Shown: in pieces, positions 16,601-62,150 of the stretch
Layout of the letters: the number at the start of each line of letters is the position of its first letter
Numbering within the stretch: position 1 is the first letter of the stretch
IMG/VR virus record: IMGVR_UViG_3300050343_000191
Coordinates: 124,001 to 188,000 of that record
Length of the DNA stretch: 64,000 nucleotides
Strand: one strand, 5' to 3'
Notes under the pieces: generated by a model
Database searches by the model: none
What the model saw: only the letters and a program-made list of their open reading frames with translations
Told to the model about the DNA's origin: nothing
Position numbers and translations under genes: made by a program

Positions 16601-19600
16601 TACACTCGTGACTCCTACTGCACTATCATTATCAATTTCATAGTTATTTCCTGCATTATTTTCAGTGGTGGGAGTTTGGAATACGCCATTAATAAACAGA
16701 ATACCATTACCAGCATCGATACCAGTAGTATTAGCACCGCCAACTTTCAATGTATATGTCTTACCAATTCCTGTGAAGGAATCTGAAATATCATCAAATA
16801 CCATATTGGTGTCATAATCAGATCTTAGGAAAGTTCTTCCAGAGAATTGTGCAGTTACATATGGGAGATTACTTTCATTTCTTCTTGCTCTATTATTACC
16901 TTTTGGTGGATCAATGAAGTGAACTTCGTTTCCAACAATATTGAGAGCACCCCTGTAGATTTGAATAGTTGATCCATCAATGTGTGATGTTGCTGCAGAT
17001 CCAACAGCACCTCTCTGTACAGCGACTGTTGGGAATGTTGCAGCAACACCAGCAGCAATAAGACCGTTAATAGGACCAAGAATTTGACCACCAATATTTG
17101 TGCTAAGACCAACCTCAACAACCTTCATATACTCATCATCAACTCTCAAAAGGTCTCTTGGTTGGACGGAAGAAATGCCAGTAACATTAAATGTCGAAAT
17201 ACCTACAGAGATTCCTCCACTATTAAAATCAAGTTTATGATTAATTGGGGTAAATGTTATTGGTTGTTGTACAATACCATCAATAGCAATGACAGTTTTA
17301 CTCAACTTCTTAGTAAATTCTAGTTCATGAGCATTTCCGATTCCCGCATCAGTGAAGGTAACGGATATACCTGCAGTAGCGAACTGTGGCGTTGTCGATA
17401 ATTTAAATGTATCTGGAGTTAGGGCAATTGGATAAACTCTATCTGGTAGTTTATCTGTTACAATACCAAGATGGTTTACAGTTGCACCAATTCCCATCGG
17501 TTGTGTTCCAATGCCAATAAAGGTTGAAGTTGGTCTGTAAATTAATTCTTCTCCAGTATTAAAGAAATGATCTCTTAATGTGAATACACCTGTTGAATAA
17601 TTGATATTAACAGTATCTGTAGGATCAAATGTCTTCACATAAATTGGTTTACCTTCATGAGTCAATGTAAAGTTGGTTCTATTTGCTCTTAGACCATTAA
17701 GTCCATCAAATGCAGAGAGGAATACCAACTGATCAGTTGGACCGTATGAAAGTGAATTTGCTTGGTTATCAAAGTCCATCTCTCTGTAGAAGACTTCACT
17801 AAATGCTTGTGCCTCTACATTGTATCCCAAGTCTGGATAGAAATTGAGATAGAACTGATTACCACTGATCTCTCCACCAAATGTACCAAGACCAGTAACA
17901 TTATTAACTGGTGCAAATGGTCCAGGAGTGACAGTAACTTCACTAGTTCTTGAATTTGAAAGAATGTTGACTTGATGGATTGCTGATGTTGTTCCTGCAG
18001 AAACACGAACGACTGCTGCTGCAGCAGAAATGAATCTGCTATCAAAAGTTCCAACTCTTACTATATCAGTACCAAATCCAATAGTTGATTCTAATCTTGC
18101 ACTTCTTTCTGTTCCTGCAGGTTGATTGTTAAGAAGGAATCTATATGTTCCGATTCCAGTTGTGGTATTTCCAAATCCAACAATATGTGTTCTATAATCA
18201 AAAGCATCAACCTGATCAAAATTACGACCACGTACAGAAACAATACCTGAATTAGCATCATAAATTGCACTAACAAGTCCAACATTTGATGCACTATAAG
18301 ACTGTGTAGTATGATCAAAATAATACTCACTTACATAAGTATTAGTTCCATCAAAATCAATTGCAGCTTCAACATAGTTAGTTTCTCCACTAAATCTATT
18401 GGAAATCTCAATGTTTGCAAATAATCCATTGAAATCAGTACCATTGAATTCTGCAAGTGTTCCAATATTATTACCACCGGATACACTAGAGAGACCAACA
18501 AAAGAACTGACAAGATTTACAGAACCGATTGCTTGAGTACCAATACCAGAATTTCCGGGAGGAAGTGCTTGGAAAAGATAGGATTTTTTGAGTACTTTGA
18601 TATCATGATCAGTTTCAAAGGCATCTGTTGGAGTAAAGACAAGAGTCTTTCTTCCAAAACTATCAATATTTGCACTAAAGTCCCCAAGTTTAATATTTGT
18701 AAACGAATTATATTTTTCAAATATAAAAATATCATTGGTAGTTGATTGAACAACTAATTCGGATAACTGAACATCTTTACTGTCTGGATCAGCAATTTGT
18801 ATGACATATCTTACATGATTATCTACAAAATCGATCTCTTCAATTTCAACGAAAGTATCCTTAAATCCTCTACTAGAGAACTTATTACTAATATCATCAT
18901 GAATGAGAACCCTATTAGTTCTACACTCAATATAATCCGTCAACTTTCTATTCTGAATCTGTAGAGCGTTTGATTGCGTAAGACCAGTAACAGGACTTAC
19001 TCTTGGATCAACATCTACTGCATTATCGAAGTTGTTGATAATATCAACTCTTCTTTCACTAACAACATCAAGAATTACAATTGCCGTAGTTGTTCCACCA
19101 AGACCAATACCACTTCTACCAACAGAAGTTACACCAACATCAGCAAAGTTCTTAAGACCTGCTGGGTGAACAATACTGTTTACTGGGGTAGAAAGTTCAT
19201 CCCAAGTTATGGGACTCTTAATAGAGTATGAAAGATTCTGATAATAGTCATTGTTAGGAGTTACTTGATAATCTTCACTAATTTTGCCAACATCATCACT
19301 CCAACCAAGTTCCATTCTTGAGGAGTAATCAACTACAAATTTTGCCCTCTTTCTATCAATATTAGTTACTTCTGCAATTACACCACTAATAATCCCTTTA
19401 ATAATATCACCTTTATTAAGATTATATTTTCCAGTATATTTGATGTAATCATCTCTCACTAGAGAAATAAATGCATCTTCAGAACGGAATCCATTGCCAT
19501 CACTATTAACAAATAGTCTTTCATTCTTAGTGAATGTTCCCCTTTTTTGTTTGATATCAATGCGTGGATAGATGTTCTCATTGATAAGAGTTGCATATCC

Positions 19601-22600
19601 TGATTGATATGTCTTAGCAATACCTGCGTTGGTTGTAAGTCCAACACCCGATGCATCAATTAATTGAAAAGTCAACGTTGCTGGACTGGTATTTGCAAAC
19701 TGTATTACTTTGAATAATTGATAGTCATAGTCACTAGAATTGAATCCAGATCCATCTGGAGAGGACATTTCAATGCCTTCAACAAATACTTTATCATCAA
19801 CAGAAAATGGTGCTTGATTATATCCAAGAATTGGTGTCTTAAGCACACAAGTTGCAATTCCAGTTGGTCCACTAACCATTGAAACGATACCCACACCATT
19901 TGAATTATTGATTGTAATAATCTTATGTGGTTCAGAATCTAATCCAAATATTGGTGCTAATTGAACAATTTCGGAAATAGATCCATTCGGCGCTTTTGCA
20001 ACAAGAGTTGTTGTATCAACAATACTCTTAGTCGTATCATTCCAGAGAATAACATCTGGATCAGCAAGATATTTTGCACCGGCAAACTGAATATCAATTT
20101 CTTGAATCGTATCTAAATTGTCAACAGTGACAATTGGTGGTACAAATGCTTCTGGTCTAAGAGTCTTATCTGAAGGATAGTCATATCCAATATCACGAAG
20201 TCTAGTCTTTTTGATTCTACCAATAGAAGTAGATATTCCAATAATATTAGCATTTCTACCATTTACAGATGTAACATCTTCAAATGATGGGAGTTTATCA
20301 AAATTAAATCCTTCTGAAATAACTCTTACTTTAGAAATACTTCCATTAAGTGCGTTTGAGGATTTAGTGCTATATTCTAAAGTATCACATTCAGCACTGA
20401 TGTACGATAATATATTTGGATATCTGAATGGAGAAATCTTGAACTCAGTTGTTGAAGATGTTGTTGAAATTCCAAATACAGAGTACGTTCCGTTATATTC
20501 ACTATTTTCATATCTAATTTCTGAATATGCTTTGACTTCAGTATCCGCAGTGCTGATGTATCCACCTTTTTCTAAACCATAGTAAAGTCTTGATGGAATA
20601 TTATTAGAGTAATTCAGAGTCAATGAAGAATCAGAGTCAGTGCCAAAACCAACACTACCAAGACCAACTACGTTGAAGTCTCTAGAATCTCCTGAACTGA
20701 TATATTCATTATTGAAATTCTTGTCTCTGTAAATCTTTAATTGATATCCTCTTAGTGAAGTATCCTGAAGATTAAACTTCAAGTCACTATTTCTTATAAC
20801 ATCAATTGGTGGATTGACAGCAGAAATATAATGATTAACTCCACCAGTTGCACTAATACTTACTCCATTCTCTGTTTTTGGATTAGATTCATATAAAGTC
20901 TCTGCAAGTCTGAATTTATCAATACTATCTTGAATTATATAATAAATGCCAGTTGTTATACCAGAAGCAACTTCTGCTGCTTCATAAAATACTTTATCAC
21001 CAGTTTTATATCCATGATCTTGATAGGTAAACGATCCGTCAGAGAGAGTAATACCCGTCGAATTGATACCAATTGTATTGACAAGAATTTTCTTCTCATC
21101 TAAATTCAATTTTATATTCAATGCTCCAGTTGTTCCAAAACCAACAACAGTATTTGGAACTACATTTAGTTTGATAACGTCTTTATTGAGTAGACCATGA
21201 GTTGACGAAGTACTAACAATGGTTGTAATTCTGTCAACATTTCCAAGAATTTGTCCTTTATTAGTTTCTAAAAGATATTCTGAATTATTAGATCCATCAC
21301 TATAGAAGAACAATCCTTCAGATGCAGTGGTTAAACCAACTTGTGTTGTTAATCCAATGAGATTTTCGCCTTTGTTTATAACAAATACATCACTTGATAA
21401 TGTATTTGTATCTGGAATAAAGAATGTTCCTTGGTTAAGGGAGTTATCCCCCACAATAAGAGAATCAACGCCAGCAAGAGTACTCTTAGTAAAAGTAATT
21501 CTTTCTCCTGTCCTTAATCCATGATTGGGTATATAAATTGCTCTACAGGGAACAGAAACGCTAGATGTAGTGACTCCAACTGTTCTTACTTTCTTTTGAG
21601 CTCCACCTGCAGTAGTTCCAACACCAACGGATGTTACTGCATTAAAATAAATTAGTTTATTTCTTTCAGAATTAAACTTTGTGGTTTTTACTGGAAGTTT
21701 GACTCTATCAGAACTCAAACTAAGATCACTTCCAAAGGAGTGTGCTACACCAGTAGATCCAAATCTCTTAACAGTAAGTACGCCGTTTGAATAGTCATTG
21801 AGAACTCTTACAGTCTCAGTACCATCAGAGGATGTAATTGTTATAGAATTGCCAATTGATACTTCTCTAAATCTTCTAGAAACAAAAATATCCTCAAATT
21901 TACCGCCAGGAAGACCTGAGTAATTGGACATTGTTCCAGCAAGACCAACGGACTCTGTAGTAAATCCTATTCTCTTAGGTCCACTAAGGAATGGTATAGA
22001 GGTCGAAAGACCACTCACAAGAACGGTATCGTTATTATTTAAATCATATCCATCGCGATTGTAAGCAGAAACTTGATTATCATTGTCCCAAACAAATACA
22101 CAGTTTACATTTCTTTCCAATTCAGTTCTAATAGAAGATATACCAGCACCCTTTAATTCTTGAACTTCTCCCCTAAGACCAGCACCGCCTGTACCTTCAA
22201 AATTAAAGTTAACTCTATCGCCAATAGAGTAACCAACTCCACCATCAATGACTCTAATTTCATCAACAGATCCCTTTGTAACTGACTCTACATTACAGCG
22301 TTGTTGGAAAGTTTCATAAGATTCGTTGATAAAGTCATAATCTGCATATGGATCACTGACTTTATATGGAAAGGTATTTCTAACAAGATTATTTCCATTG
22401 AAATCAAATGTCTGATCTAAAATTAGATTTTCACCTATTACTTGTGACTTAAATTCATTTCCAACAAAATATGGGTATGCTGGTGCAAATTTCGCAGAGT
22501 TTTGCCCACTGGTTGTAACTCCAACAAAGTATGCATAAACTCCATTTGGAAACTCTGGAGTTTTACAGAATCTACCATTATGCAAATCAAGATCACCACT

Positions 22601-25600
22601 ATTATTGTATAAGTAATCTTCTTTGAAGAATCCTGGTTCAAAAGTAGGTGGTCTATCAACAATAGAATTAGTGCTTAATTCATATCCAGTTTCAAGTCTA
22701 GCAACACCTGACTGAACATTATCTGCCGTTTGATATCCAAAGGGACCATAAATTGGATTTCCGTCATATGCCCATCCAATAATGGGTGAGTGAGATCCAT
22801 TTAAAGATTCAAAGTTCGATGCAAGATCTTGGGAGTATCCATATATTCCATAAACCAAAGAATCCTGCTTCTCATCCTTGTAAAGACTAGAATAAATTTC
22901 TGGACTTCTTGTTGCGGAAATTTTTCCAAATCTAAACGCATCGTTTATTGTTAAATCTCTAATTCTAGTATCAAAAATTGCACCAGATCCTCTAGAATCT
23001 ACAAATATTGAAGTAGAAGATGTGCTATACCCAATACCCGGATTAATGACAATAACATCATCAATCTTTCCATTTAAAAGTACGGGTCTGAGAATTGCAC
23101 CTACTCCACCAGAAGGATCTTCAATTTTAAGTTCTGGGATTGACTTATATTCAGATCCTTTGTTTAATACTTGAACATCAACAATTCTTCCATTAGAAAT
23201 AATTGGTGCAAGTTGAGAATTTTTACCTTTACTTATTGAAATTCTTGGTTTTGTATGTAAATTGAATACAGTAGATCCATATCCAGTTCCAGATTCATAC
23301 AAATAGGCATCAGTAATCTCACCAGTTACGATTGGTGTAAAGGTAAAGGTTCCAATACCAGATGCTCCAAAAGAAACATTAGCATTAACTTTAATCTCTG
23401 GATATTGGAAAATATGGTAACCACTTCCAATAGAATCAAATTTATTAAACTTTGATTTTTTGAGATCATCGGTAAATGTTCCAGCAATACCAACATTTAC
23501 AAGTCTAAATTGATCTGAATCTACAAATTGAATAGAATAACTATTTGAAGTAGAAAGACCAACAATGGGATTGCCTGTTGATTTATATGTAACTATTTCT
23601 CCATCCTTAAATCCATGATTATTAAAGTATACTGAATTATACTCTGTAGAAATACCACTAGATTTTACGCTTAATTTTCTGTAAGCATAACCAGATCCAC
23701 TATTGAGAACAGTAATAGATCTTACATTTTTTTGCGATAGAGTTCTAAATTTATGAATACCAGATGCTGATGTAGCAGCTGAAAGACCAATAGTATTGAT
23801 ACCAGTACTTATAGTGGTAATACCTGATGCAGAAGGTGCAAATGCATCATTATCATTTTTAAATAATCTAATAGTGGAAGTATTTACAATTCTAATTACA
23901 TATTCATCACCACTACTCAAACCTCCTGTTGAGATATTATTTGGATCGTATGCTTGTCCAATCTCAATAGGATTATTACCATTTTGATTGTAGATAATAT
24001 GCTCACCATCTGCAAGATTATGTGCCTTTGTAAATGTAATGGTTTCATTACTAGGATCAATTCCGCCACCAACATCTAGTCTACGACTGTCAAAAGATAT
24101 CTCTCTAAATCTTGTTCCAATAACTGGTTCCAAGGAACAACCAGATCCATTACCACCTATCAAATCTAGAGATAGGAATTCATCAAATCCAAATTCTTGA
24201 GGGTCAACAATAACTTGTTTAACATTACCAATAACAACTGGTTCAACCTTTGCACCAGTTCCAAGAGGAAGACCAGATCCAACCTCTGCAACATCTTCAA
24301 TATTTAATTCTGGTGGATTTATAACATCATATCCTTTACCACCATTAAGAACTTCAAATTCCTCTACAGGTCCATAATAAATTTTATCCCTGGAATCAGG
24401 ACTTACAATCTCTACACCATCAATCAATACTCCAACATTACTTACAGTCCTATCAACACTTTTACTACCTTGTAGTTGCTGTGATAATGGGAACTTTCTA
24501 AGAATTTTTTTACTTGAAAGAGTTCTATTTTCATGTCTCTTTAAAGTAAAATTATGTGCTCCAGCACCAAAGTTTGGATTAAATCTAGCAATATCATCAA
24601 AGTTTGCAATAGTTTTGGCGTTATTGGCAAGTTGAGACTTTGAAGCGTATAGTTTAATTTCGTTTGCAGCAACGAGTTTTACAAAATAACTTTCTCCAGA
24701 TGAAAGTCCAATTAAAGGACTTTCTGCGGTGTAGACTATTTCATCACCATCTCTAAAATCGACTGGTGTTGAAAATACAATTGTTCCATAAGTCTTATAA
24801 TAAGAATTGTAACCACCCAATCCTTGAGTATTGTTTGAGCCTACTGTTTTAATATATCCATCTGGAAGTATAGACTCAATAATATCATCTTTAATAGTAT
24901 ATCCTGGAAGAGAATTTGATGCCAAATACCCAAAGATTGCGAAATCGTCTACGTAAATATTGGATGTATTTGCAAGATATACTTCATTACCTACAGTAAG
25001 AACTACTCCAGAACTCTTTGCCTTTACAATCTTTCGTCTAATACTGTAATCTTTATTAGGATCTGGTGTAAAAGTACCAATATTGGATAGAGTAACTTCT
25101 TTGGTTAATGTGTTTATTGAAGACACTGTTGCAAATGATGCATTAGCAACATTTGGATCAGGTACAACTACTTGTTGACTATCGCCAATGAGAACCTCAA
25201 CAGAATCTCCTAGTTTAAGAAATGCCTTATCAATATCAGAAAATAGTGTGAATACAGAAGAATTTACTTCCTCCACTTTAAATCTTGGACTGGTATTATA
25301 AATCCAAGAATTAGCAAACATTTGCTTATAAGTCCTATCAACGACAGGATTCTCAATAACCTCACCAACATTTCTTGTAGTTATTTCCTCATCTTCTTCC
25401 ATCAGAGGAATATCTACCAAAGGTTTTAATTCTGATAGAACTCCAGTGATTCTCATATCACATCTATTTTCAATATCACCATCCTCATAACCAAAAATGG
25501 TTTCATCTGCTCTTACAACATCAGAGATATTAATTTTTGACGTGACACCAGTACAACCATAAAACTGATTAATACTCTTTGAAGTATAATCAATTCTATT

Positions 25601-26644
25601 ATTTCCAGAAATAATGGTCCCTGTTTGACCAAATCCAATTGTAGAGTCAACACTAATAACTGACGCATTTACTTCAACTGGTTCTAATGATCTAGATGCT
25701 CCAGGAATAGTAAAAATACCCTCTACAAGGTCTCTATCATTATATCCAACAAATACCCCAAGTTTATAAAAAGTTTGAGTGTCTCTTGTAAAAATCTCAA
25801 CATCAGAAACTGATGCATTTGTATCAAGATCATTTGACTTAAATACTGTCTGACCTTCTAATCCAAAAGGATTACCCGAAATATTTTCCGCTACGATAAC
25901 TTCTCTTCTGATATATTCGGCAGAAGATGGTTTAATTAGTCTACCTTCAAGATCTAATACTTCAGCATGAACACCATAAAGAACTTTGAAAAGAATTCTA
26001 ATAGATTCTGCAATACCCTTTGATTGATAAAAGTTTCTTGCATGCTTGATAAAGTTTCCAACATCTAAATCAGAAACAAAATCATACTCTTCCAGACCCG
26101 GAGTAAAGGTTTTTTTTAATTTTTTATAAAATTCTTGTAAGAAAACAACACTTAAGTTCTTTACTACTGATCCATTGGCCGCGGCGGATGCAGAAGTTTC
26201 ACTAAAAACAATATTCTGACTGTTTACATTGCTGAGAATATTAGAAATTCCTATATCATATCCAGAGATTCCACTGAATCCGCGAACACAACTATTGAAA
26301 GAAGTAGTAGTCTTTGATTTATAGGTGATAATTTCATCACCAATTTGTAAAAGACCATACTCGTCAGGAAATCCTTTTGTGGAAGTTACCTGAATAGTAT
26401 CTTGAGAAGATGTAATATCTCCTGTAAGCGATGTCTCACCTACAACAACCTCTGGAACGAGATTATCTACTCTGATATATCGATCAAGATTATCGACAAG
26501 ATCTACACTACCGCCCTGATGTTCTAAAGACAAATAGTATTGTCTAAAAAATTCTATGGCGTTTGGAAAATCAGCAACTAAAAACTCTGGAAGTTGGCTC
26601 TCAATAATTTTATTGAGTTGCACTCTCTTCTCAAATTGCGACAT
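13697..26644 (-). CDS. gp7: Baseplate wedge initiator gp7-like giant protein (4315 aa)
   Basis: N-terminus IIESQLPEFL...FFRQYY; FYQSKGIAESIRILFKVLYG; YYQNLSYSIKS...VHPAGLKNF; sits between gp6 and gp8. Confidence 0.85.
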   Translation of the reverse strand: MSQFEKRVQLNKIIESQLPEFLVADFPNAIEFFRQYYLSLEHQGGSVDLVDNLDRYIRVDNLVPEVVVGETSLTGDITSSQDTIQVTSTKGFPDEYGLLQIGDEIITYKSKTTTSFNSCVRGFSGISGYDIGISNILSNVNSQNIVFSETSASAAANGSVVKNLSVVFLQEFYKKLKKTFTPGLEEYDFVSDLDVGNFIKHARNFYQSKGIAESIRILFKVLYGVHAEVLDLEGRLIKPSSAEYIRREVIVAENISGNPFGLEGQTVFKSNDLDTNASVSDVEIFTRDTQTFYKLGVFVGYNDRDLVEGIFTIPGASRSLEPVEVNASVISVDSTIGFGQTGTIISGNNRIDYTSKSINQFYGCTGVTSKINISDVVRADETIFGYEDGDIENRCDMRITGVLSELKPLVDIPLMEEDEEITTRNVGEVIENPVVDRTYKQMFANSWIYNTSPRFKVEEVNSSVFTLFSDIDKAFLKLGDSVEVLIGDSQQVVVPDPNVANASFATVSSINTLTKEVTLSNIGTFTPDPNKDYSIRRKIVKAKSSGVVLTVGNEVYLANTSNIYVDDFAIFGYLASNSLPGYTIKDDIIESILPDGYIKTVGSNNTQGLGGYNSYYKTYGTIVFSTPVDFRDGDEIVYTAESPLIGLSSGESYFVKLVAANEIKLYASKSQLANNAKTIANFDDIARFNPNFGAGAHNFTLKRHENRTLSSKKILRKFPLSQQLQGSKSVDRTVSNVGVLIDGVEIVSPDSRDKIYYGPVEEFEVLNGGKGYDVINPPELNIEDVAEVGSGLPLGTGAKVEPVVIGNVKQVIVDPQEFGFDEFLSLDLIGGNGSGCSLEPVIGTRFREISFDSRRLDVGGGIDPSNETITFTKAHNLADGEHIIYNQNGNNPIEIGQAYDPNNISTGGLSSGDEYVIRIVNTSTIRLFKNDNDAFAPSASGITTISTGINTIGLSAATSASGIHKFRTLSQKNVRSITVLNSGSGYAYRKLSVKSSGISTEYNSVYFNNHGFKDGEIVTYKSTGNPIVGLSTSNSYSIQFVDSDQFRLVNVGIAGTFTDDLKKSKFNKFDSIGSGYHIFQYPEIKVNANVSFGASGIGTFTFTPIVTGEITDAYLYESGTGYGSTVFNLHTKPRISISKGKNSQLAPIISNGRIVDVQVLNKGSEYKSIPELKIEDPSGGVGAILRPVLLNGKIDDVIVINPGIGYSTSSTSIFVDSRGSGAIFDTRIRDLTINDAFRFGKISATRSPEIYSSLYKDEKQDSLVYGIYGYSQDLASNFESLNGSHSPIIGWAYDGNPIYGPFGYQTADNVQSGVARLETGYELSTNSIVDRPPTFEPGFFKEDYLYNNSGDLDLHNGRFCKTPEFPNGVYAYFVGVTTSGQNSAKFAPAYPYFVGNEFKSQVIGENLILDQTFDFNGNNLVRNTFPYKVSDPYADYDFINESYETFQQRCNVESVTKGSVDEIRVIDGGVGYSIGDRVNFNFEGTGGAGLRGEVQELKGAGISSIRTELERNVNCVFVWDNDNQVSAYNRDGYDLNNNDTVLVSGLSTSIPFLSGPKRIGFTTESVGLAGTMSNYSGLPGGKFEDIFVSRRFREVSIGNSITITSSDGTETVRVLNDYSNGVLTVKRFGSTGVAHSFGSDLSLSSDRVKLPVKTTKFNSERNKLIYFNAVTSVGVGTTAGGAQKKVRTVGVTTSSVSVPCRAIYIPNHGLRTGERITFTKSTLAGVDSLIVGDNSLNQGTFFIPDTNTLSSDVFVINKGENLIGLTTQVGLTTASEGLFFYSDGSNNSEYLLETNKGQILGNVDRITTIVSTSSTHGLLNKDVIKLNVVPNTVVGFGTTGALNIKLNLDEKKILVNTIGINSTGITLSDGSFTYQDHGYKTGDKVFYEAAEVASGITTGIYYIIQDSIDKFRLAETLYESNPKTENGVSISATGGVNHYISAVNPPIDVIRNSDLKFNLQDTSLRGYQLKIYRDKNFNNEYISSGDSRDFNVVGLGSVGFGTDSDSSLTLNYSNNIPSRLYYGLEKGGYISTADTEVKAYSEIRYENSEYNGTYSVFGISTTSSTTEFKISPFRYPNILSYISAECDTLEYSTKSSNALNGSISKVRVISEGFNFDKLPSFEDVTSVNGRNANIIGISTSIGRIKKTRLRDIGYDYPSDKTLRPEAFVPPIVTVDNLDTIQEIDIQFAGAKYLADPDVILWNDTTKSIVDTTTLVAKAPNGSISEIVQLAPIFGLDSEPHKIITINNSNGVGIVSMVSGPTGIATCVLKTPILGYNQAPFSVDDKVFVEGIEMSSPDGSGFNSSDYDYQLFKVIQFANTSPATLTFQLIDASGVGLTTNAGIAKTYQSGYATLINENIYPRIDIKQKRGTFTKNERLFVNSDGNGFRSEDAFISLVRDDYIKYTGKYNLNKGDIIKGIISGVIAEVTNIDRKRAKFVVDYSSRMELGWSDDVGKISEDYQVTPNNDYYQNLSYSIKSPITWDELSTPVNSIVHPAGLKNFADVGVTSVGRSGIGLGGTTTAIVILDVVSERRVDIINNFDNAVDVDPRVSPVTGLTQSNALQIQNRKLTDYIECRTNRVLIHDDISNKFSSRGFKDTFVEIEEIDFVDNHVRYVIQIADPDSKDVQLSELVVQSTTNDIFIFEKYNSFTNIKLGDFSANIDSFGRKTLVFTPTDAFETDHDIKVLKKSYLFQALPPGNSGIGTQAIGSVNLVSSFVGLSSVSGGNNIGTLAEFNGTDFNGLFANIEISNRFSGETNYVEAAIDFDGTNTYVSEYYFDHTTQSYSASNVGLVSAIYDANSGIVSVRGRNFDQVDAFDYRTHIVGFGNTTTGIGTYRFLLNNQPAGTERSARLESTIGFGTDIVRVGTFDSRFISAAAAVVRVSAGTTSAIHQVNILSNSRTSEVTVTPGPFAPVNNVTGLGTFGGEISGNQFYLNFYPDLGYNVEAQAFSEVFYREMDFDNQANSLSYGPTDQLVFLSAFDGLNGLRANRTNFTLTHEGKPIYVKTFDPTDTVNINYSTGVFTLRDHFFNTGEELIYRPTSTFIGIGTQPMGIGATVNHLGIVTDKLPDRVYPIALTPDTFKLSTTPQFATAGISVTFTDAGIGNAHELEFTKKLSKTVIAIDGIVQQPITFTPINHKLDFNSGGISVGISTFNVTGISSVQPRDLLRVDDEYMKVVEVGLSTNIGGQILGPINGLIAAGVAATFPTVAVQRGAVGSAATSHIDGSTIQIYRGALNIVGNEVHFIDPPKGNNRARRNESNLPYVTAQFSGRTFLRSDYDTNMVFDDISDSFTGIGKTYTLKVGGANTTGIDAGNGILFINGVFQTPTTENNAGNNYEIDNDSAVGVTSVIYTGITSVDGSFIQSDFDINQNQLPRGGLIVSLGSTPGLGYAPLLGAEIKVLKNSTGQLTDLIGINTVGSTVAISTALYNNITGILEIETNDSHNILGGDFVKLDNLEFSCGSTGYGTTTIFPDYDYPVDVVQVISATRVSIRVGPSTIPHTYETGGTVRRYFTNNFGSGYREPVSIGITDLAYEHKFIRSVNNSVTASSGGPFTPTKADYTSHTGVLRLTIPSHGLDTTDTVQIATDGLIFTCSDDDFFTEQPYPRATDPAAGATLGITSFTTNTISVGVGSAGGSGTGAVVDATVGIGGTLAFSITNPGQGYINPALIIPEPNYENVEVVGVSRLGIGATTETGRNLLLNLTVGAAGTSNVGIGSTLFLIDTFKVARSGYAFKPGDILEAVGLVTAKNYTQPIAPFQLEVVETFTDRFSSWSFGEMDYIDSIFGYQNGTRKRFPLYYNGELLSFELDPNNPLSANIDLDSVLVIFINGVLQTPGYAYQFTGGTSFLFMEAPKVNDKVDIFFYIGQDGVDVLQVETTETLKIGDDVRMLRQPLISTSQRQINDRAITEIVGSDIVETNIYSGPGVDDTNFRPFDWIKQKKDIYVKGDIVSKVRPVLETKIFPTAKIIGDVTPTSSDIFVDNAQFFDYDEIILDLNQNTFTFDAFMMETSNEPVSAAFTSTVSIAGTVSAVTIDNVGFGYTTSTIDIKFSAPKEIGVGIGITATGTANISNGQVSSVTVINPGFGYTNTNPPRIIAELPTPLYETINTVQNVQGFSGIITGISTTTGTGGHPLALKFNFRAMKDYGENGEANVASDALDLVAGYPIMIYDTTVGNGVTSVNSSDSAVVGIGTSFLDNVYVVNSITSLASNAEIICNIDSGSPVIGILESGTFDDLQAGLTTSLGKLSWGRIYNYDNRTNGISIGVTGLTVDAGLSTFPTIQRRGNFGEGKTGAIRSRKPRADGVSLEADNNLSFYIQ

Positions 26645-28981: not shown

Positions 28982-28989
28982 TATTTATA
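28982..28989 (-). promoter_or_regulatory. T4-type late promoter TATAAATA
   Basis: Exact consensus about 25 nt upstream of gp25. Confidence 0.8.
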
Positions 28990-29326: not shown

Positions 29327-29476
29327 TTAACCTCTGCCTTGTCCGCGATAGACTTTTTTAGCAGTGTTGCGAGACGACGCGGCGTACTTCGTGTTTTTTC
29401 CGGATCCTTGACGAGTTTTCTTCGGTTGGGATTCAACGAATGTTTGCCCATTAAGACCAGTTCTAGAGCGTGCCAT
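29327..29476 (-). CDS. 49-aa very basic small protein (YRGQG C-terminus)
   Basis: Hand translation MARSRTGLNGQTFVESQPKKTRQGSGKNTKYAASSRNTAKKVYRGQGRG; followed by the terminator. Confidence 0.75.
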   Translation of the reverse strand: MARSRTGLNGQTFVESQPKKTRQGSGKNTKYAASSRNTAKKVYRGQGRG

Positions 29477-30441: not shown

Positions 30442-30470
30442 ATTATACTCCATTATAAGGAGCACGTCAA
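30442..30470 (-). promoter_or_regulatory. Sigma70-type promoter TTGACG-N17-TATAAT
   Basis: -35 at 30465-30470, -10 at 30442-30447, 17-nt spacer; upstream of the glycosyltransferase-like gene. Confidence 0.8.
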
Positions 30471-30661
30471 TCTTTTAGTTCGGTTATCAGTATAGAATCT
30501 CCATCAACCTCCAAATTTAACTGTGTACCTTCATACCACCCAAATTCAGAGATAATCCACTCCGGTACTTGAACGACATATTCACCTGTTACGGGATCGA
30601 CCTCTACAGTCGAAAAATTTTTGCCGGGATTTTTTTGCATAAGAGGTATTTCGTTTTCCAT
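30467..30661 (-). CDS. AbrB/MazE/SpoVT-type DNA-binding domain protein
   Basis: YVVQVPEWIISEFGWYEGTQLNLEVDGDSILI matches the swapped-hairpin pattern xPxxIxxxxGWxxGxxL. Confidence 0.65.
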   Translation of the reverse strand: MENEIPLMQKNPGKNFSTVEVDPVTGEYVVQVPEWIISEFGWYEGTQLNLEVDGDSILITELKD

Positions 30662-30749
30662 TTTTGTTTTATATAGAAAAGTGTAGAGTTCTATAAAGAG
30701 GTCGCGAAAGCAAGACTTTGTAGCCTAATGGTACCTTAGCGTTTTAGCC

Positions 30750-30800
30750 ACACGCGCACGGCGCGGCGCACGCGGGGGGCGGGGGCACTGCCCGACACCC
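30750..30800. other. Non-coding G/C-run element at the early/structural junction
   Basis: cacgcgcacggcgcggcgcacgcggggggcgggggcactgcccgacaccc is almost pure GC in an AT-rich genome. Confidence 0.7.
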
Positions 30801-30821
30801 ACCCACTGTGTGCCACTTAAC

Positions 30822-31121
30822 TCACTGCCACAACCAACGGGCGATGCGCTCTCTGTTGCGTAGGGGCATCAGGCGGGTGTACTCTACCCAACGCTTGCCC
30901 AGTTCGTGACGCTTGATCAGTCCCTGCTCTGCCATCACTTTGAGTAGCATTGAAAGACCCGTCCGCGCTTCATTAGGCAAACCCAGAGCGGCGTTGATGT
31001 CAGTGGGGCGCATTCCATCCTGAGTCATGCCATCGTCGCCGTCATCCATAGGAAGGACTGAAAGGATCGCCCACTGATACGTAGCACCGAAGGACTGACG
31101 ACTTGTGATTGAGGTGAACAT
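30822..31121 (-). CDS. Winged-helix DNA-binding protein (putative)
   Basis: MRPTDINAALGL...LSMLLKVMAEQGLIKRHELGKRWVEY follows the wHTH helix-helix-wing pattern; dyad promoter upstream. Confidence 0.55.
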   Translation of the reverse strand: MFTSITSRQSFGATYQWAILSVLPMDDGDDGMTQDGMRPTDINAALGLPNEARTGLSMLLKVMAEQGLIKRHELGKRWVEYTRLMPLRNRERIARWLWQ

Positions 31122-31193
31122 GGTTGGTTTGTTTGCTTGTGTTTATTGTACAGGGTCAGAAGGGAGAATCGCTATCTCCCTTGTGCCAGTTAT

Positions 31194-31421
31194 TCAACCG
31201 AACATCGCTTCCGCTAGTTCCTCCCATGTGTGGTACTGGGTAGGGTTGCCGGGTTCGGGGTTTGCCTTTGGAGCATCAGACAACATGCACGCCCAAGCGT
31301 TGACGTGGTAGGTGTAAGGTTGAAACGTATTGTCATCCTCACAGTATGCAAGACCCTGACGGGGGATAAGATCGCCGTGATGGGATGCGTAGTTTAGGTG
31401 ATCCATTGTGTGGGGTTCCAA
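31194..31421 (-). CDS. Hypothetical early protein
   Basis: 75-aa ORF with its own leader and -10. Confidence 0.65.
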   Translation of the reverse strand: MEPHTMDHLNYASHHGDLIPRQGLAYCEDDNTFQPYTYHVNAWACMLSDAPKANPEPGNPTQYHTWEELAEAMFG

Positions 31422-31475
31422 CTGAGTTAATTCTACAGGGTGAAGGGACCGAATCGCGATCCCTTTACAATTGTT

Positions 31476-31703
31476 TTAGAATGCGACCAGTTGATCGATG
31501 TCCCACTGATCCACTTCGGTTGCTGTTGATTGGATCCACTGATTGACGTGCTTCGTTGTGGTGACACTGTAGCGGGTGCTGCTGCGTATCCATCCCTTAC
31601 CAGGCACCAGAGCAGCGACAGGGGTCTTGTATGAGAAGAACACCGACGTACCGTCTGCCAGGTCAACTTGAGTTTTGTTTGCGCCGAGTGATTGAACTTG
31701 CAT
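31476..31703 (-). CDS. Conserved-type phage early protein (start MQVQSLG)
   Basis: VFFSYKTPVAA...YSVTTTKHVNQW; ATG follows the AACAACCAACC leader. Confidence 0.7.
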   Translation of the reverse strand: MQVQSLGANKTQVDLADGTSVFFSYKTPVAALVPGKGWIRSSTRYSVTTTKHVNQWIQSTATEVDQWDIDQLVAF

Positions 31704-31887
31704 GGTTGGTTGTTTCAACTGAGATAACAATAGGGCATCTGGTGCGTTGTGCCTATTTCATGTGCCACCTGTCAAACTGGCACACAATCCAAATTCAACC
31801 CCCCTAGCGTGCTAGGATGAAGGTAGACTCTAAAATTGGTTGAGTTAGTATTAATTAAAGGGGAGAATCATCCCCCCCTAAGTGTTA

Positions 31888-32370
31888 TCAGAAGTTGGTG
31901 CAGAAAATATATCCGTCCTGCTCAATGTAGTCGTGGCGGAGATTATCCCATGTGTCTTCCCAATCAACAGAAACAAAGGAAGGAATATCGAGTGAGTAAC
32001 AATCAGAAACTAACTGTTCTGCAAACTCAGCGCCTGACATTTCGCCCTGATAAGAGTCAGAAATGTCAGAGATACAATCCTCTCCAAAGTATTCAATAAA
32101 AGCACGGATTGCATCAGCAGGATAATCCTCTAATGCTTCATTGATTGCCTCTTGATTATCACTATCCTCTGCCTCAATCGTTTCTTCTTCGATGTCATCA
32201 ACTGTTTCGCCCTTTACCTCTAACAATGCCATGTAAAAATCGGTAAAGTGAACTTTAGTATTTGAACCTTCGACGGTACAATAACCACAAGCGATGGCGA
32301 TCTCTGTAGGTTTCTTGCCTTCCGCTTGCATTGCGGCGACGGTTTCTTTGAGAGCGGTTCCAGTGAGCAT
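31888..32370 (-). CDS. Fusion of a cyanobacterial AbrB N-terminal domain with an ArdA-like acidic domain
   Basis: Residues 1-54 LTG.AL..V...E.A.ACGY...V.FTDFY.ALL..KG match the cyAbrB (Sll0359-type) N-domain. The C-terminal DSYQGE...EFAEQLV...DIPSFVSVDWE...DY...GYIF matches the ArdA C-terminal domain. Confidence 0.65.
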   Translation of the reverse strand: MLTGTALKETVAAMQAEGKKPTEIAIACGYCTVEGSNTKVHFTDFYMALLEVKGETVDDIEEETIEAEDSDNQEAINEALEDYPADAIRAFIEYFGEDCISDISDSYQGEMSGAEFAEQLVSDCYSLDIPSFVSVDWEDTWDNLRHDYIEQDGYIFCTNF

Positions 32371-32457
32371 GGTTCTGTGTGAGAGTGCGGGGTGGTCCCG
32401 CTTGTGTTTATTGTAGACCCTAGGGGGGAGTTTGTGAACCCCCCCAGTGGACGCTTA

Positions 32458-32664
32458 TCAGACCGCCACAGTCTGAAGGGTTTCGTTGCGGATCTGCTGA
32501 TTCATGAACTTACCTTTGGATTCAGCAGTATTGAACCCCAGAGCGAAACGCTGAACGTCTGCCACTGTGTAAGTGTAAGCACGCCCGCCGTTAAATGTAA
32601 CGGTCACGCGGTCGCCGTCAAGAGCGACTGAATCAAGAGCGGATGAGTTGAAAGCGTTGATCAT
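32458..32664 (-). CDS. KTSC-domain protein (start MINAFNSSAL)
   Basis: SSALDSV...VTFNGGRAYTY...AESKGKFMNQQIR. Confidence 0.65.
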   Translation of the reverse strand: MINAFNSSALDSVALDGDRVTVTFNGGRAYTYTVADVQRFALGFNTAESKGKFMNQQIRNETLQTVAV

Positions 32665-32739
32665 GATTTTGTAGAGTTTGTTTTGTGGAGTCTTTAGGGC
32701 GCTGCCGTTCCCGTGTTTCAATTATAAGGGATGAACGGA

Positions 32740-32928
32740 TCAGTCGCGGTCGCTGATGTTCCAGGTTCCGAACTGTCCACTAGGACGGGAGTCGTTCCAC
32801 TTGCTGAACCATTCCTGGCGTGCTGCTGCCCGTGCTTGTGCCTGTTGGCGTTCTTGCTCCAGACACTTCAGACCAATCGCTGCGAGGCGGTCATCTGATG
32901 CGAAGATCCCGTTTCCGTAGTTTTTCAT
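32740..32928 (-). CDS. Hypothetical early protein
   Basis: 62 aa; dyad at 32989, TATAAT at 32954-32959 and leader upstream. Confidence 0.7.
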   Translation of the reverse strand: MKNYGNGIFASDDRLAAIGLKCLEQERQQAQARAAARQEWFSKWNDSRPSGQFGTWNISDRD

Positions 32929-33006
32929 GGCGTTGGTTTGTTTGCTTGAATTAATTATAGGGCATCGAGTGCCCTATGGTTCAGTTGGTGGACACTTCGG
33001 AAAGTG

Positions 33007-33183
33007 TCACAGGGTGTCCTCTCCGTACTCCATGTATGTCCATCCTAACCAGTCCTCAACGAAAGCATAGGATCCCGACTCGCTGTGCATACTGTAGCAT
33101 AAATCTGCTGCTGTGTAAGGATCGCTTACGATTTCCCGCTCACCGAGAGCAGGGCAGGCAACGAGGTAAGATCCAGTCGTCAT
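33007..33183 (-). CDS. 58-aa hypothetical early protein
   Basis: Hand translation MTTGSYLVACPALGEREIVSDPYTAADLCYSMHSESGSYAFVEDWLGWTYMEYGEDTL; AAACAAACCAACC leader. Confidence 0.7.
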   Translation of the reverse strand: MTTGSYLVACPALGEREIVSDPYTAADLCYSMHSESGSYAFVEDWLGWTYMEYGEDTL

Positions 33184-33379
33184 CGGTTGGTTTGTTTGAC
33201 TTGTGCCAATGATGCCCCAGATTTCGACTCAGCGCAAGGGGTAAGGGACAGTTCAGAAAGTGGCACAAGGTAGCAGTTTTATTGGTGTGGGGGTGTTATC
33301 TTATAAGAAATCAGACGAGGCGGGGGGTACCGCTGTTGACGAAAATACATCGCCACTGATCCTGCCATGAAATAATCAT

Positions 33380-33404
33380 AAAAAAACCGCCCCATAAGAG
33401 CGGT
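33380..33404 (-). terminator. Intrinsic terminator
   Basis: Minus strand ACCGCTC-TTATG-GGGCGGT-TTTTTT, downstream of the 33427-33579 gene. Confidence 0.7.
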
Positions 33405-33426
33405 GGACGGTTTTCAAACTGGCACA

Positions 33427-33579
33427 CTACCAGCGGTCGAACTGTTCTTCTGTGCTAACTTGCACCTGTTCATCACCTTCCAGACCTAGAACCTCATTCC
33501 AATCATAAGATTCTAACTCTAGGTCATCATAACACTCTATGTCAAGTGTGACTCGGACAGTTCGCTTAGTGGCATACAT
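33427..33579 (-). CDS. 50-aa acidic hypothetical protein
   Basis: Hand translation MYATKRTVRVTLDIECYDDLELESYDWNEVLGLEGDEQVQVSTEEQFDRW. Confidence 0.65.
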   Translation of the reverse strand: MYATKRTVRVTLDIECYDDLELESYDWNEVLGLEGDEQVQVSTEEQFDRW

Positions 33580-33611: not shown

Positions 33612-33845
33612 TCATGCGTAATGCTTATATGCAAGCGCATCATAATCTTGTGTGTCGCGTGTGTATTCTTCATCCAGATCTTCATCTAGATGTGTATGTG
33701 CATACGATTGCACACACATCTCATAAGACTCGTCGAGATCGTATTCATATGCTGGTGCATAGGTATAGTCGAGATCGTAATCGTCGTACATAATTCTCGT
33801 CGAGATTGCCATGTTTATTATACCGATAACTCGTCTAGATGTCAA
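33612..33845 (-). CDS. Asp/Tyr-rich hypothetical protein (start uncertain)
   Basis: YDDYDLDYTYAPAYEYDLDE; overlaps the palindrome array; TATAAATA at 33886-33893 upstream. Confidence 0.55.
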   Translation of the reverse strand: MTSRRVIGIINMAISTRIMYDDYDLDYTYAPAYEYDLDESYEMCVQSYAHTHLDEDLDEEYTRDTQDYDALAYKHYA

Positions 33846-33940
33846 CTAGAAGGATCTAGTGCGTCTCGTCGAGATTCATAACATTTATTTATAAGGTTTA
33901 GTCGAGATTGTGTAGTTATCATAACATAAGTCTCGACGAG
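33671..33940. repeat. Array of (T)CTCGTCGAGA(T) / CATCTAGATG palindromes (iteron-like)
   Basis: Copies at 33683, 33729, 33766, 33795, 33830, 33864, 33899 and an inverted copy at 33931; AT-rich late-promoter segment at 33878-33898. Confidence 0.8.
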
Positions 33941-33978
33941 TTATTGTGTCCTTCTGTGAATTTTTTCCGCCCGGTGGG

Positions 33979-34007
33979 TTGACAAGTCGCCCGTCTTATG
34001 ATACGCT
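33979..34007 (+). promoter_or_regulatory. Antisense sigma70-type promoter TTGACA-N17-TACGCT with extended -10 TG
   Basis: Perfect -35, 17-nt spacer and TGnTACGCT; points against the local direction of transcription. Confidence 0.55.
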
Positions 34008-34046
34008 CGCTAAACTATACTTCCATACACGAAGAAACTCTTTCAT

Positions 34047-62070: not shown

Positions 62071-62074
62071 TTAG

Positions 62075-62147: not shown

Positions 62148-62150
62148 AGA

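What the first reader, a model, noticed from the sequence alone, without database searches (positions are those of the whole stretch)
33671..33940. Palindromic iteron-like array: candidate replication origin
Seven copies of a GTC(G/T)AGAT or inverted core fall within about 210 bp. They include two perfect TCTCGTCGAGA palindromes, plus CATCTAGATG and an ACTAGA-N4-TCTAGT hairpin. Spacing in the right half is close to 33-35 nt (33795, 33830, 33864, 33899, 33931), or about three helical turns. An AT-rich patch and divergent promoters are adjacent. Phased repeats, an AT-rich unwinding element and a nearby promoter are the hallmarks of T4 oriE-type and plasmid iteron origins. The D/Y-rich ORF over the left half may be partly a by-product.
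Basis: partly seen in the sequence, partly recalled or inferred. Interest (0 to 1): 0.7.

Follow-up and report, generated by a model that had tools for sequence, protein, structure and literature searches.

The report
Palindrome array around a cyanophage promoter
The repeats are real: a 12-13 bp palindrome kept at fixed places around the promoters and start codon of a small acidic gene in many T4-like cyanophages, which looks more like a protein-binding gene switch than a replication origin, though an origin is not excluded.

Summary
Seven copies of a palindrome lie in 33728-33941; read on the minus strand it is RATCTCGACGAGA. The 231-kb genome has no other cluster.

All genes here are on the minus strand. 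On that strand the sites interleave with a 12/12 consensus sigma-70 promoter (TTGACA 33845-33840, N17, TATAAT 33822-33817), a T4-late-type TATAAATA box (33893-33886) and the start codon (33791) of a 59-aa acidic gene. A 50-aa acidic gene and a terminator follow.

The layout recurs in about 44 distinct metagenomic viral loci and in isolates S-SRM01, S-SKS1, S-T4 and P-SSM2: a site upstream of -35, a site fused to -35 or in the spacer, and a site 2-5 nt before the ATG. The spacers between them are not conserved. Inside the gene, D-L-D is written GATCTCGAC in 85 of 100 cases, against a 9% genome share for CTC, so the constraint is on the DNA.

RNA-library contigs begin at 33880 and 33811, where the two promoters predict transcript starts.

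Best reading: an operator array for an unidentified DNA-binding dimer that controls this operon (about 0.5). An origin is possible (about 0.13). The tested origin features were mostly not met: no strand switch, only a trivial AT patch, no DnaA boxes and no initiator.

The parts
33930..33941 (+). Site S5: a full palindromic site in inverted orientation (GTCTCGACGAGT), the most upstream of the array.
33897..33908 (-). Site S4: a half or variant site (ATCTCGACTAAA), just upstream of the TATAAATA box.
33886..33893 (-). TATAAATA, a T4-late-type promoter box (P2). Relatives carry TATAAATAA or CATATATAC at this place.
   Evidence: The genome holds 18 TATAAATA, of which 10 lie within 60 nt upstream of a same-strand start, for example before the gp25-like gene at 28982. 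It is a conserved block in the alignment. RNA contigs end at 33880, 6 nt downstream of the box.
33864..33875 (-). Site S3: a full site (ATCTCGACGAGA) upstream of the -35 hexamer, centred at about -59 from the predicted P1 start.
33840..33845 (-). -35 hexamer TTGACA of the consensus sigma-70-type promoter P1.
   Evidence: 12 of 12 matches, 17-nt spacer
33829..33840 (-). Site S2: a variant site (ATCTAGACGAGT) fused to the -35 hexamer and filling the promoter spacer.
   Evidence: The place is conserved in relatives, in either orientation.
33817..33822 (-). -10 hexamer TATAAT of P1. The predicted transcript start is about 33810-33811.
   Evidence: An RNA contig ends at 33811.
33795..33806 (-). Site S1: a full site that ends 3 nt before the start codon, inside the short 5' leader. 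It is in sense orientation in 42 of 42 scored distinct upstream regions.
33612..33791 (-). Gene for a 59-aa acidic D/Y-rich protein (MYDDYDLDY...LAYKHYA). No Pfam or PHROG family. At least 205 protein clusters in public metagenomes.
33764..33775 (-). Internal half site inside the gene, read as D-L-D-Y.
33728..33739 (-). Internal full site inside the gene, read as D-L-D-E.
   Evidence: GATCTCGAC in 85 of 100 D-L-D
33427..33579 (-). Second gene of the operon: a 50-aa acidic protein (phrog_12516, function unknown). It lies next to the acidic gene in nearly all loci long enough to show it.
33386..33404 (-). Intrinsic-terminator-like hairpin plus T run that closes the two-gene unit.
33976..34010 (-). 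Conserved non-coding element (GCGAGCGTATCATAAGAC...TTGTCAACCC) upstream of the array. It is unique in the genome, present in most relatives, and of unknown role.
30822..31121 (-). Gene for a 99-aa winged-helix protein, the only plausible DNA binder in the neighbourhood. It is a candidate only and is not shown to bind the sites.

Best explanation
The array is a cis-regulatory operator region. A sequence-specific double-stranded-DNA-binding protein, most likely a dimer that reads the two half-sites ATCT(C/A)G and C(G/T)AGAT, would occupy sites that bracket and overlap two tandem promoters of a small operon. The promoters are a T4-late-type TATAAATA promoter and a consensus sigma-70 promoter. The operon encodes a 59-aa and a 50-aa acidic protein and ends in a terminator.

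Sites lie upstream of -35 (S3), on the -35 and spacer (S2), across the 5' leader up to the start codon (S1) and inside the first gene. A binder could therefore block or time transcription initiation and elongation, probably cooperatively between sites about three helical turns apart.

Shown: the sites, their statistical excess, their conserved register with the promoter elements and the ATG, the DNA-level constraint inside the gene, and RNA coverage that begins inside the array.

Inferred: that a protein binds, that the effect is repression or timing, and who the binder is. It could be a phage winged-helix protein in some lineages, another phage protein, or a host factor.
For: 1. Anatomy on the coding strand. 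A 12/12 sigma-70 promoter lies inside the array. Site S2 is fused to the -35 hexamer, S1 ends 3 nt before the ATG, and S3 is centred at about -59.

2. Conservation of layout. The same order is found in about 44 distinct IMG/VR loci and in S-SRM01, S-SKS1, S-T4 and P-SSM2. The order is site, AT box, site, -35 plus site, -10, site, ATG.

3. Footprint. In the alignment the sites are as conserved as the -10 hexamer, while the spacers between them carry almost no information.

4. Double-stranded recognition. S2 occurs in either orientation; upstream sites are 87 sense and 46 inverted. This fits a palindrome read on duplex DNA. Variants change the inner base of one half-site only (CTCGA to CTAGA).

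5. DNA-level constraint inside the gene. Leu in D-L-D is CTC in 86 of 100 cases against a genome share of 9%. GATCTCGAC is used in 85 of 100 cases against about 1% expected from codon usage.

6. Relatives with extra clusters place them in front of other genes, again with a site a few nt before the ATG and next to -10-like boxes. S-SRM01 has three clusters within 5.5 kb.

7. Transcripts. RNA-library contigs cover the acidic gene and stop at 33880 (two runs) and 33811, each 6 nt downstream of TATAAATA and TATAAT respectively. None of the 9 RNA runs covers 33881-34011.

8. Spacing of neighbouring sites across loci peaks at 31-35 bp, about three turns.
Against: - No binder is identified.
- The only local DNA-binding candidate is the 99-aa winged-helix protein. 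Its fold matches ArsR/MarR-type regulators only weakly (best Foldseek E about 0.01).
- That protein is absent from S-SKS1, S-T4 and P-SSM2, and from several motif-bearing metagenomic loci.
- The always-linked proteins (59 aa, 50 aa and the 64-aa AbrB-like protein) are strongly acidic and are poor DNA binders.
- In this genome, and in S-T4, S-SKS1 and P-SSM2, the motif occurs at this one locus only. That also fits a unique cis element such as an origin.
- The RNA evidence rests on a few low-depth assembled contigs, whose ends are not reliable 5' ends.
- There are no experimental data.
Confidence: 0.5

Rival explanations
1. Replication origin of the T4 oriE or iteron type. The repeated sites would bind an initiator, and a transcript from the strong early promoter would prime or open the DNA.
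For: - The cluster is unique per genome here and in S-T4, S-SKS1 and P-SSM2.
- There are 5-7 sites about three turns apart.
- A consensus early-type promoter lies inside the array. T4 oriE is reported to depend on an early promoter and has evenly spaced repeats (PMC3016281).
- As in T4 oriE, small early ORFs overlap the repeats, and the locus lies a few kb from the baseplate genes gp25 and gp6.
- In relatives, the non-coding region just upstream carries an AT-rich block, an inverted repeat and 11-22-bp tandem direct repeats. In S-SKS1 it also carries three DnaA-box-like 9-mers 21 bp apart.
Against: - The sites are palindromes in either orientation, not direct repeats.
- Their number and spacing vary among relatives (13-78 bp), while their register with -35, -10 and the ATG is fixed.
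- The window has no strand switch: 39 of 39 long ORFs are on the minus strand, and there is no skew inflection.
- The AT patch is 50 bp at 76%.
- There are no DnaA boxes within 5 kb.
- No RepEA or RepEB homologues were found, though these queries are too short for that to count as absence.
- The AT block, inverted repeat and tandem repeats of relatives are absent from this whole genome, so they are dispensable.
- S-SRM01 and several contigs have extra clusters in front of other genes.
- Even in T4, no link between the iterons and oriE activity has been established (PMC3016281).
Confidence: 0.13
2. RNA-level element. The motif in the 5' leader and inside the coding sequence would be a target for a translational repressor or a sequence-specific endoribonuclease that shuts off this early mRNA, by analogy with T4 RegA or RegB.
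For: - S1 is always in sense orientation, sits directly before the AUG, and replaces a Shine-Dalgarno sequence.
- The internal copies are in sense orientation.
- regA is present in the genome.
- All genes are co-oriented, so the upstream sites may also be transcribed.
Against: - S2 is fused to the -35 hexamer in every locus, and upstream sites occur in both orientations. This argues for duplex DNA recognition.
- As RNA the palindrome would form at best a 5-bp stem with a 3-nt loop, and the common variants break a pair without compensation. This is read from the sequence and was not folded.
- There is no Rfam match.
Confidence: 0.1
3. Recombination or packaging signal. The repeated sites would serve as a hotspot for cassette exchange in a hyperplastic region (as PeSLs do) or as a pac-like site for the terminase.
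For: - The array borders a GC-rich island that is absent between the same flanking genes in Sf-CH8.
- In relatives, arrays also lie downstream of the anti-restriction-like gene.
- Many metagenomic contigs end within a few kb of this region.
- The duplicated ends of the S-T4 record include the locus.
Against: - PeSLs are many per genome and consist of a terminator hairpin plus a promoter (PMC4122927). Here there is one cluster per genome.
- Contig ends near a hypervariable island are expected from assembly alone.
- The fixed register with the promoter elements and the ATG is not explained by this reading.
Confidence: 0.06
4. By-product of a repetitive coding sequence (DLDE repeats), or chance.
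For: Two sites lie in the ORF and encode D-L-D.
Against: - Five of the seven sites are non-coding.
- S1 is in a different frame from the internal copies.
- The non-coding copies are conserved in place across genera.
- Chance is excluded by the shuffles.
Confidence: 0.02

Closest known systems
T4 oriE region (iterons, repEA and repEB, early promoter)
   Same: A cluster of short repeats, unique in the genome, overlapping small early ORFs, next to an early-type promoter and near baseplate genes.
   Different: The T4 repeats are direct 12-mers (GTTGAAGGTAAT) with a strict 24-bp period. They lie antisense-embedded in gene 5. Here the sites are palindromes in both orientations, tied to -35, -10 and the ATG. 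No repEA or repEB homologues and no strand switch were found. The role of the T4 iterons is itself unproven (PMC3016281).
Iteron origins of plasmids (R6K gamma, pSC101, RK2 and P1 types)
   Same: Several copies of one protein-binding sequence within about 200 bp, with spacing close to whole helical turns.
   Different: From general knowledge, those origins have 17-22-bp direct repeats in one orientation, an adjacent Rep gene, DnaA boxes and a marked AT-rich unwinding element. None of these was found here.
Operator arrays of phage and bacterial repressors (lambda OR/OL, phi29 p4 sites at the A2c/A2b/A3 early-late switch, tandem NrdR boxes)
   Same: Palindromic sites of 12-17 bp that overlap -35, the spacer and the +1 region. 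There are several sites per promoter region, neighbours lie a whole number of turns apart, and adjacent early and late promoters share one set of sites. This comparison is from general knowledge.
   Different: The motif matches none of those operators. The binder is unknown. Extra copies are embedded in the coding sequence and dictate codon choice. The host phage is a strictly lytic T4-like phage.
PeSLs (promoter-early stem-loop cassettes) of T4-like phages
   Same: A near-consensus sigma-70 promoter in a hyperplastic region of small early ORFs (PMC4122927).
   Different: PeSLs are repeated many times per genome and are defined by a terminator hairpin plus a promoter. Here the repeated unit is a palindrome confined to one locus.
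T4 MotA-box middle promoters
   Same: A phage-specific DNA box next to the -35 position combined with a sigma-70-type -10 hexamer. Cyanomyoviruses lack motA and asiA (PMC5780444), so another factor would be needed.
   Different: The sequence is different and palindromic. It occurs at one promoter region rather than at dozens of promoters, and the -35 hexamer is kept.

Membership tests
T4 oriE-type origin | A cluster of evenly spaced direct repeats (12 nt, 24-bp period in T4). | tested here: not met
   T4 has 6 copies at exactly 24 bp. Here the sites are palindromes, with 87 sense and 46 inverted among upstream sites. Spacing is 31-36 bp in this window and 13-78 bp among relatives.
T4 oriE-type origin | A nearby early-mode (sigma-70) promoter. 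| tested here: met
   TTGACA-N17-TATAAT with 12 of 12 matches at 33845-33817 on the minus strand. This is a sequence match only.
T4 oriE-type origin | RepEA and RepEB proteins encoded at the origin. | tested here: inconclusive
   No match in the genome at E up to 1. The queries are only 45 and 50 aa, so absence is weak evidence.
T4 oriE-type origin | Location at a switch of transcribed strand or a nucleotide-skew shift (reported for oriE, oriF and oriG in PMC3016281). | tested here: not met
   All 39 ORFs of 90 aa or more in the 64-kb window are on the minus strand. Cumulative GC skew falls almost monotonically; its only rises are minor ones at the GC-rich blocks, and there is no sustained turning point at the locus.
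T4 oriE-type origin | Replication initiates there early in infection. | not testable with these tools
   The public runs are held only as assembled contigs, so no depth profile or infection time course is available.
Plasmid-type iteron origin | Adjacent initiator (Rep) gene. | tested here: not met
   Neighbouring ORFs have no Rep-like family. Hits were KTSC, an anti-restriction PHROG and unknown PHROGs.
Plasmid-type iteron origin | DnaA boxes and a marked AT-rich unwinding element beside the iterons. | tested here: not met
   No TTWTNCACA within 5 kb, and only 4 strict boxes scattered in the genome. The AT maximum is 76% over 50 bp. In the relative S-SKS1, three boxes 21 bp apart do occur upstream.
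Promoter-operator array of a dimeric DNA-binding regulator | Palindromic sites that overlap core promoter elements or the transcript start. | tested here: met
   S2 is fused to -35 and lies in the spacer, and S1 lies in the leader up to the ATG. This holds in about 44 loci and 4 isolates.
Promoter-operator array of a dimeric DNA-binding regulator | Sites conserved while the flanking non-coding DNA diverges. | tested here: met
   Per-column information is high at the sites and at -10, and near zero in the spacers.
Promoter-operator array of a dimeric DNA-binding regulator | An identified cognate binding protein. | tested here: inconclusive
   The winged-helix candidate is not universal. The DNA-protein complex job was not folded.
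Promoter-operator array of a dimeric DNA-binding regulator | Transcription actually starts at the predicted promoters. | tested here: inconclusive
   RNA-library contigs end at 33880 (two runs) and 33811, and none covers 33881-34011. Depth is low, and these are contig ends, not mapped 5' ends.
PeSL mobile regulatory cassette | Many copies per genome of a terminator hairpin plus an early promoter. | tested here: not met
   The motif occurs in one cluster in 231 kb.

The most novel reading that the evidence does not exclude
The locus is a transcription-coupled replication origin conserved across cyanomyoviruses. The palindrome array would bind an initiator, and the consensus promoter would supply the priming or opening transcript. 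In relatives the adjoining AT block, inverted repeat, tandem repeats and (in S-SKS1) DnaA-like boxes would form the rest of the origin. This would be the first mapped origin in T4-like cyanophages.
Probability: 0.13. Interest if true: 0.8.

Novelty: new variant of a known kind. Interest (0 to 1): 0.55.

Why it matters
T4-like cyanophages lack MotA and AsiA, and how they switch gene classes is poorly understood.

This is a sharply defined 12-13 bp site. It is conserved from Prochlorococcus phage P-SSM2 to freshwater Synechococcus phage S-SRM01, and it is wrapped around tandem early-type and late-type promoters. That gives a direct handle: the site can be used as bait to find the binder, and cultured phages carry it.

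The controlled genes are tiny, very acidic, widespread proteins next to an anti-restriction-like gene. The switch may therefore time a host-takeover or anti-defence function.

The locus also shows how a DNA-binding site can dictate the codons, and probably the peptide repeats, of an overlapping gene.

If the origin reading were right instead, it would locate the first replication origin in this ecologically important phage group.

Tried and rejected
- **Binder, 64-aa AbrB-like protein (30467-30661).** It co-occurs with the motif in S-SKS1, S-T4, S-SRM01 and P-SSM2. However, it is also in Sf-CH8, which has no site. It is strongly acidic (net -10), and by eye against an AbrB sequence recalled from memory it seems to lack AbrB's DNA-contacting arginines. 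Its family match is sub-threshold. Rejected as the binder.
- **Binder, 50-aa protein as a ribbon-helix-helix repressor.** Net charge about -10, and it is present in motif-less phages. Rejected.
- **Binder, winged-helix protein.** Kept only as a lineage-specific candidate.
- **Complex prediction** (two winged-helix copies plus a 25-bp site). Not folded by the tool. No evidence either way.
- **All-against-all comparison of neighbourhood ORFs in six phages**. No shared sequence-specific DNA-binding candidate. The only shared basic protein is a 49-aa, probably non-specific one.
- **Double-motif scan of prokaryote genomes**. Only chance hits in high-GC coding DNA. Nothing was learned about a host factor.
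- **BLASTN with the locus** found only S-SRM01. The other isolates had to be found through the linked proteins.
- **Rfam.** No match.
- **Literature.** No paper in the held library contains the motif in a phage context. The Syn9 transcriptome paper and the repEA/repEB paper are not held, so prior description elsewhere cannot be excluded.
- **The motif core as a -35 element.** No -10 at the right distance. Rejected by inspection.
- **The ACTAGA-N4-TCTAGT hairpin.** Not conserved; relatives have direct repeats there.

Full report
**1. Observation**

The window is part of a 231-kb T4-like cyanomyovirus contig from IMG/VR. The nearest named phages are S-SKS1 and S-SRM01.

- GTCGAGAT occurs five times in the window, all between 33732 and 33908. 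About 1.06 are expected, and 0 of 100 shuffles reach five.
- Five of the six copies in the whole genome are here.
- GTCTAGAT at 33833 and an inverted copy at 33930-33941 bring the count to seven sites.
- At up to two mismatches to the 12-mer, 10 of 15 genome-wide hits lie in these 210 bp. The rest are at the level expected by chance.
- Spacing is 31-36 bp.

The 'divergent promoters' are not there. All 39 long ORFs of the window are on the minus strand. The AT-rich patch is a single 50-bp stretch at 76% AT.

**2. Anatomy on the coding strand**

Read on the minus strand, the motif is RATCTCGACGAGA. A logo from 260 distinct contexts shows a strongly conserved AT on the 5' side and a weaker A(T) on the 3' side.

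Going downstream on the minus strand, the elements are:

| Element | Coordinates |
|---|---|
| Inverted site S5 | 33941-33930 |
| Half site S4 | 33908-33897 |
| TATAAATA box | 33893-33886 |
| Full site S3 | 33875-33864 |
| TTGACA (-35) | 33845-33840 |
| Variant site S2, fused to -35 and filling the 17-nt spacer | 33840-33829 |
| TATAAT (-10) | 33822-33817 |
| Full site S1 | 33806-33795 |
| ATG of the 59-aa gene, three bases after S1 | 33791 |

- The promoter matches the sigma-70 consensus at 12 of 12 positions.
- The gene encodes an acidic protein with 12 Asp, 12 Tyr and 6 Glu among the 58 residues after the initiator Met. It contains two more sites, read as D-L-D-Y and D-L-D-E.
- A 50-aa acidic protein gene (33579-33427) and a terminator-like hairpin (33404-33386) complete a compact unit.
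- TATAAATA is the T4 late-promoter consensus. In this genome, 10 of its 18 copies lie within 60 nt upstream of same-strand starts, for example before the gp25-like baseplate gene.

**3. Conservation**

A scan of IMG/VR for two motif copies brought in many cyanophage-like loci with 4-10 copies each.

Anchoring on the start of the acidic gene gave about 44 distinct upstream regions with the same order of elements:

- one or two distal sites;
- a CATATATAC or TATAAATAA box;
- TTATGA followed by a site;
- TTGCA or TTGACA fused to a site, in either orientation;
- GCTATAAT;
- about 20 nt;
- a site and then the ATG.

In a MAFFT alignment these blocks are about as conserved as the -10 hexamer, while the spacers carry almost no information.

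The same layout is present in several isolates:

- the freshwater phage S-SRM01, where the gene is unannotated;
- S-SKS1;
- S-T4, with the variant ATCTCGACTAGAT;
- Prochlorococcus phage P-SSM2, upstream of PSSM2_098.

Whole-genome counts show a single cluster in S-T4, S-SKS1 and P-SSM2. S-SRM01 has three clusters within 5.5 kb. Sf-CH8, S-CAM7, S-SCSM1 and DSL-LC03 have none above chance.

**4. DNA-level versus protein-level conservation**

Across 44 distinct acidic ORFs, the Leu of D-L-D is CTC in 86 of 100 cases, while CTC is 9% of Leu codons in the genome. The nine bases are GATCTCGAC in 85 of 100 cases, against about 1% expected from codon usage.

The site before the ATG is in a different frame from the internal copies. 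The constraint is therefore on the nucleic acid, and the DLDE repeats of the protein are probably shaped by it.

The ORF itself is real. Its N- and C-terminal motifs are conserved (MYDDYD..., LAY(R/K)HYA). At least 205 protein clusters exist in public data, all unnamed.

**5. Transcripts**

Nine RNA-library runs hold parts of the locus, as assembled contigs only.

- Contigs cover the acidic gene and end upstream at 33880 in two runs of different studies, and at 33811, 33856, 33839 and 33787 in others.
- None covers 33881-34011.
- 33880 lies 6 nt downstream of TATAAATA, and 33811 lies 6 nt downstream of TATAAT.

This agrees with both predicted promoters. However, depth is low and contig ends are not mapped 5' ends, so I count it as weak support.

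**6. Who binds?**

- The three proteins always or nearly always linked to the array (59 aa, 50 aa, and a 64-aa protein with an AbrB-like sequence pattern) have net charges of about -10 to -15 and are unlikely DNA binders.
- A 99-aa protein (31121-30822) is predicted to have a winged-helix fold (mean pLDDT 77). Its best structural matches are ArsR, MarR and PadR-type regulators, with weak E-values near 0.01. A sub-threshold ArsR match and occasional 'IclR family' labels agree.
- Among isolates, only S-SRM01 encodes this protein. It lies 3 kb downstream of the array in every metagenomic locus long enough to show both. It is missing from S-SKS1, S-T4, P-SSM2 and several motif-bearing loci. It cannot be the general binder.
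- A neighbourhood-wide comparison found no other shared candidate.
- The complex prediction with DNA was not run by the tool.
- S-CAM7 has a different repeat (CGCAGCATATA) at the analogous place. This hints at lineage-specific binder and site pairs. The near-invariance of the motif from P-SSM2 to S-SRM01 would instead fit a very conserved phage or host factor. This remains open.

**7. Origin hypothesis**

According to a review (PMC3016281):

[quoted passage not shown] - no link between the iterons and origin activity has been established.

In the T4 record, the repeats are GTTGAAGGTAAT at an exact 24-bp period inside gene 5, with repEA and repEB antisense to that gene.

Here the repeats are palindromes in both orientations, and spacing varies among relatives. 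There is no strand switch or skew turn, no DnaA box within 5 kb, no RepEA or RepEB match (weak test) and no Rep-like neighbour.

Points that keep the idea alive:

- the cluster is unique per genome in most phages;
- it lies about 5 kb upstream of the gp25 and gp6 baseplate genes, as in S-T4;
- in relatives, the 400-600 bp upstream of the array hold an AT-rich block, an inverted repeat and tandem 11-22-bp direct repeats;
- S-SKS1 also has three DnaA-box-like 9-mers 21 bp apart in that region.

Those extra modules are absent from this entire genome. They are therefore dispensable, and the conserved core is the array, the promoters and the acidic gene.

**8. Verdict**

The finding is a real, conserved and, as far as the held literature shows, undescribed cis element.

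The anatomy fits a promoter-operator array that controls a two-gene acidic operon in the early, host-takeover region. That region includes an anti-restriction-like gene, phrog_36653.

My estimates are:

| Reading | Probability |
|---|---|
| Promoter-operator array | about 0.5 |
| Origin | about 0.13 |
| RNA-level operator | about 0.1 |
| Recombination or packaging signal | about 0.06 |

The binder and the direction of the effect (repression or activation) are inferred, not shown.

Noticed in passing
window 30700-33420: A GC-rich block (44-49% GC against about 35% around it) lies between the 50-aa gene and the 64-aa AbrB-like gene. Those two genes are adjacent in Sf-CH8, so the block looks like an inserted island. 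It holds a KTSC-domain protein, a 160-aa acidic protein matching an anti-restriction PHROG (phrog_36653), the winged-helix gene and several small ORFs.
   Followed up: partly
window 33976-34010 (minus strand): A conserved non-coding element (GCGAGCGTATCATAAGAC...TTGTCAACCC). It is unique in the genome and recurs upstream of the array in most relatives, including Sf-CH8, which lacks the palindrome. Its role is unknown and it has no Rfam match.
   Followed up: partly
L166:700-1220 (S-SKS1); L095, L104, L114, L150, L010, L058 (800 nt upstream of the acidic gene): Relatives carry a 400-600-bp non-coding region with a fixed order of modules: an AT-rich block, the inverted repeat TTCTCAATAA/TTATTGAGAA, and lineage-specific tandem repeats of 11-22 bp that all contain CTTATAAA. 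After these come the conserved element and the palindrome array. S-SKS1 adds three DnaA-box-like 9-mers 21 bp apart. This genome lacks all of these modules.
   Followed up: partly
L170:1090-1370 (S-CAM7): A different repeated motif (CGCAGCATATA or CGCAGTATATA, at least 5 copies) occupies the analogous place upstream of the 50-aa gene homologue. It overlaps an annotated 99-aa CDS that may be spurious.
   Followed up: no
L294:5403-5570 (phage T4, gene 5): The oriE 'iterons' of T4 have an exact 24-nt period inside the gene 5 coding sequence, which equals eight codons. They may partly reflect a repeating peptide unit of the protein.
   Followed up: no
L008:2651-2788 and L008:7335-7637 (S-SRM01); L292:3089-3268 (P-SSM2): These are unannotated genes in published genomes: the acidic gene and the winged-helix gene in S-SRM01, and a 59-aa ORF in P-SSM2 with an HTH pattern like sigma region 4.
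   Followed up: partly
window 29327-29476 (minus strand): A 49-aa, very basic (net +11), Gly-rich protein conserved in S-SKS1, S-SRM01 and S-T4, just upstream of the gp25-like baseplate gene. Function unknown.
   Followed up: no
window 13697-26644 (minus strand): A single 4315-aa ORF directly downstream of the gp25-like and gp6-like baseplate genes. It is presumably a giant baseplate or fibre protein.
   Followed up: no
loci L130-L142, L159, L160 (IMG/VR contigs): Many long metagenomic contigs (34-93 kb) end within 0-10 kb of this region. Assembly breaks at a hypervariable island are the most likely cause, but a preferred physical end is not excluded. The S-T4 record also repeats about 9.5 kb at both ends, and that repeat includes the locus.
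   Followed up: no
window 33786-33806 and G000:C1:91268-91630: The start region of the acidic gene (AAUUAUGUAC) resembles, from memory, the T4 RegA RNA operator consensus. A regA homologue is present in the genome. Translational repression may add to the control.
   Followed up: partly
window 61986-62222 (minus strand): A cluster of three tRNA genes: Leu-TAA, Met-CAT and Ile-TAT.
   Followed up: no
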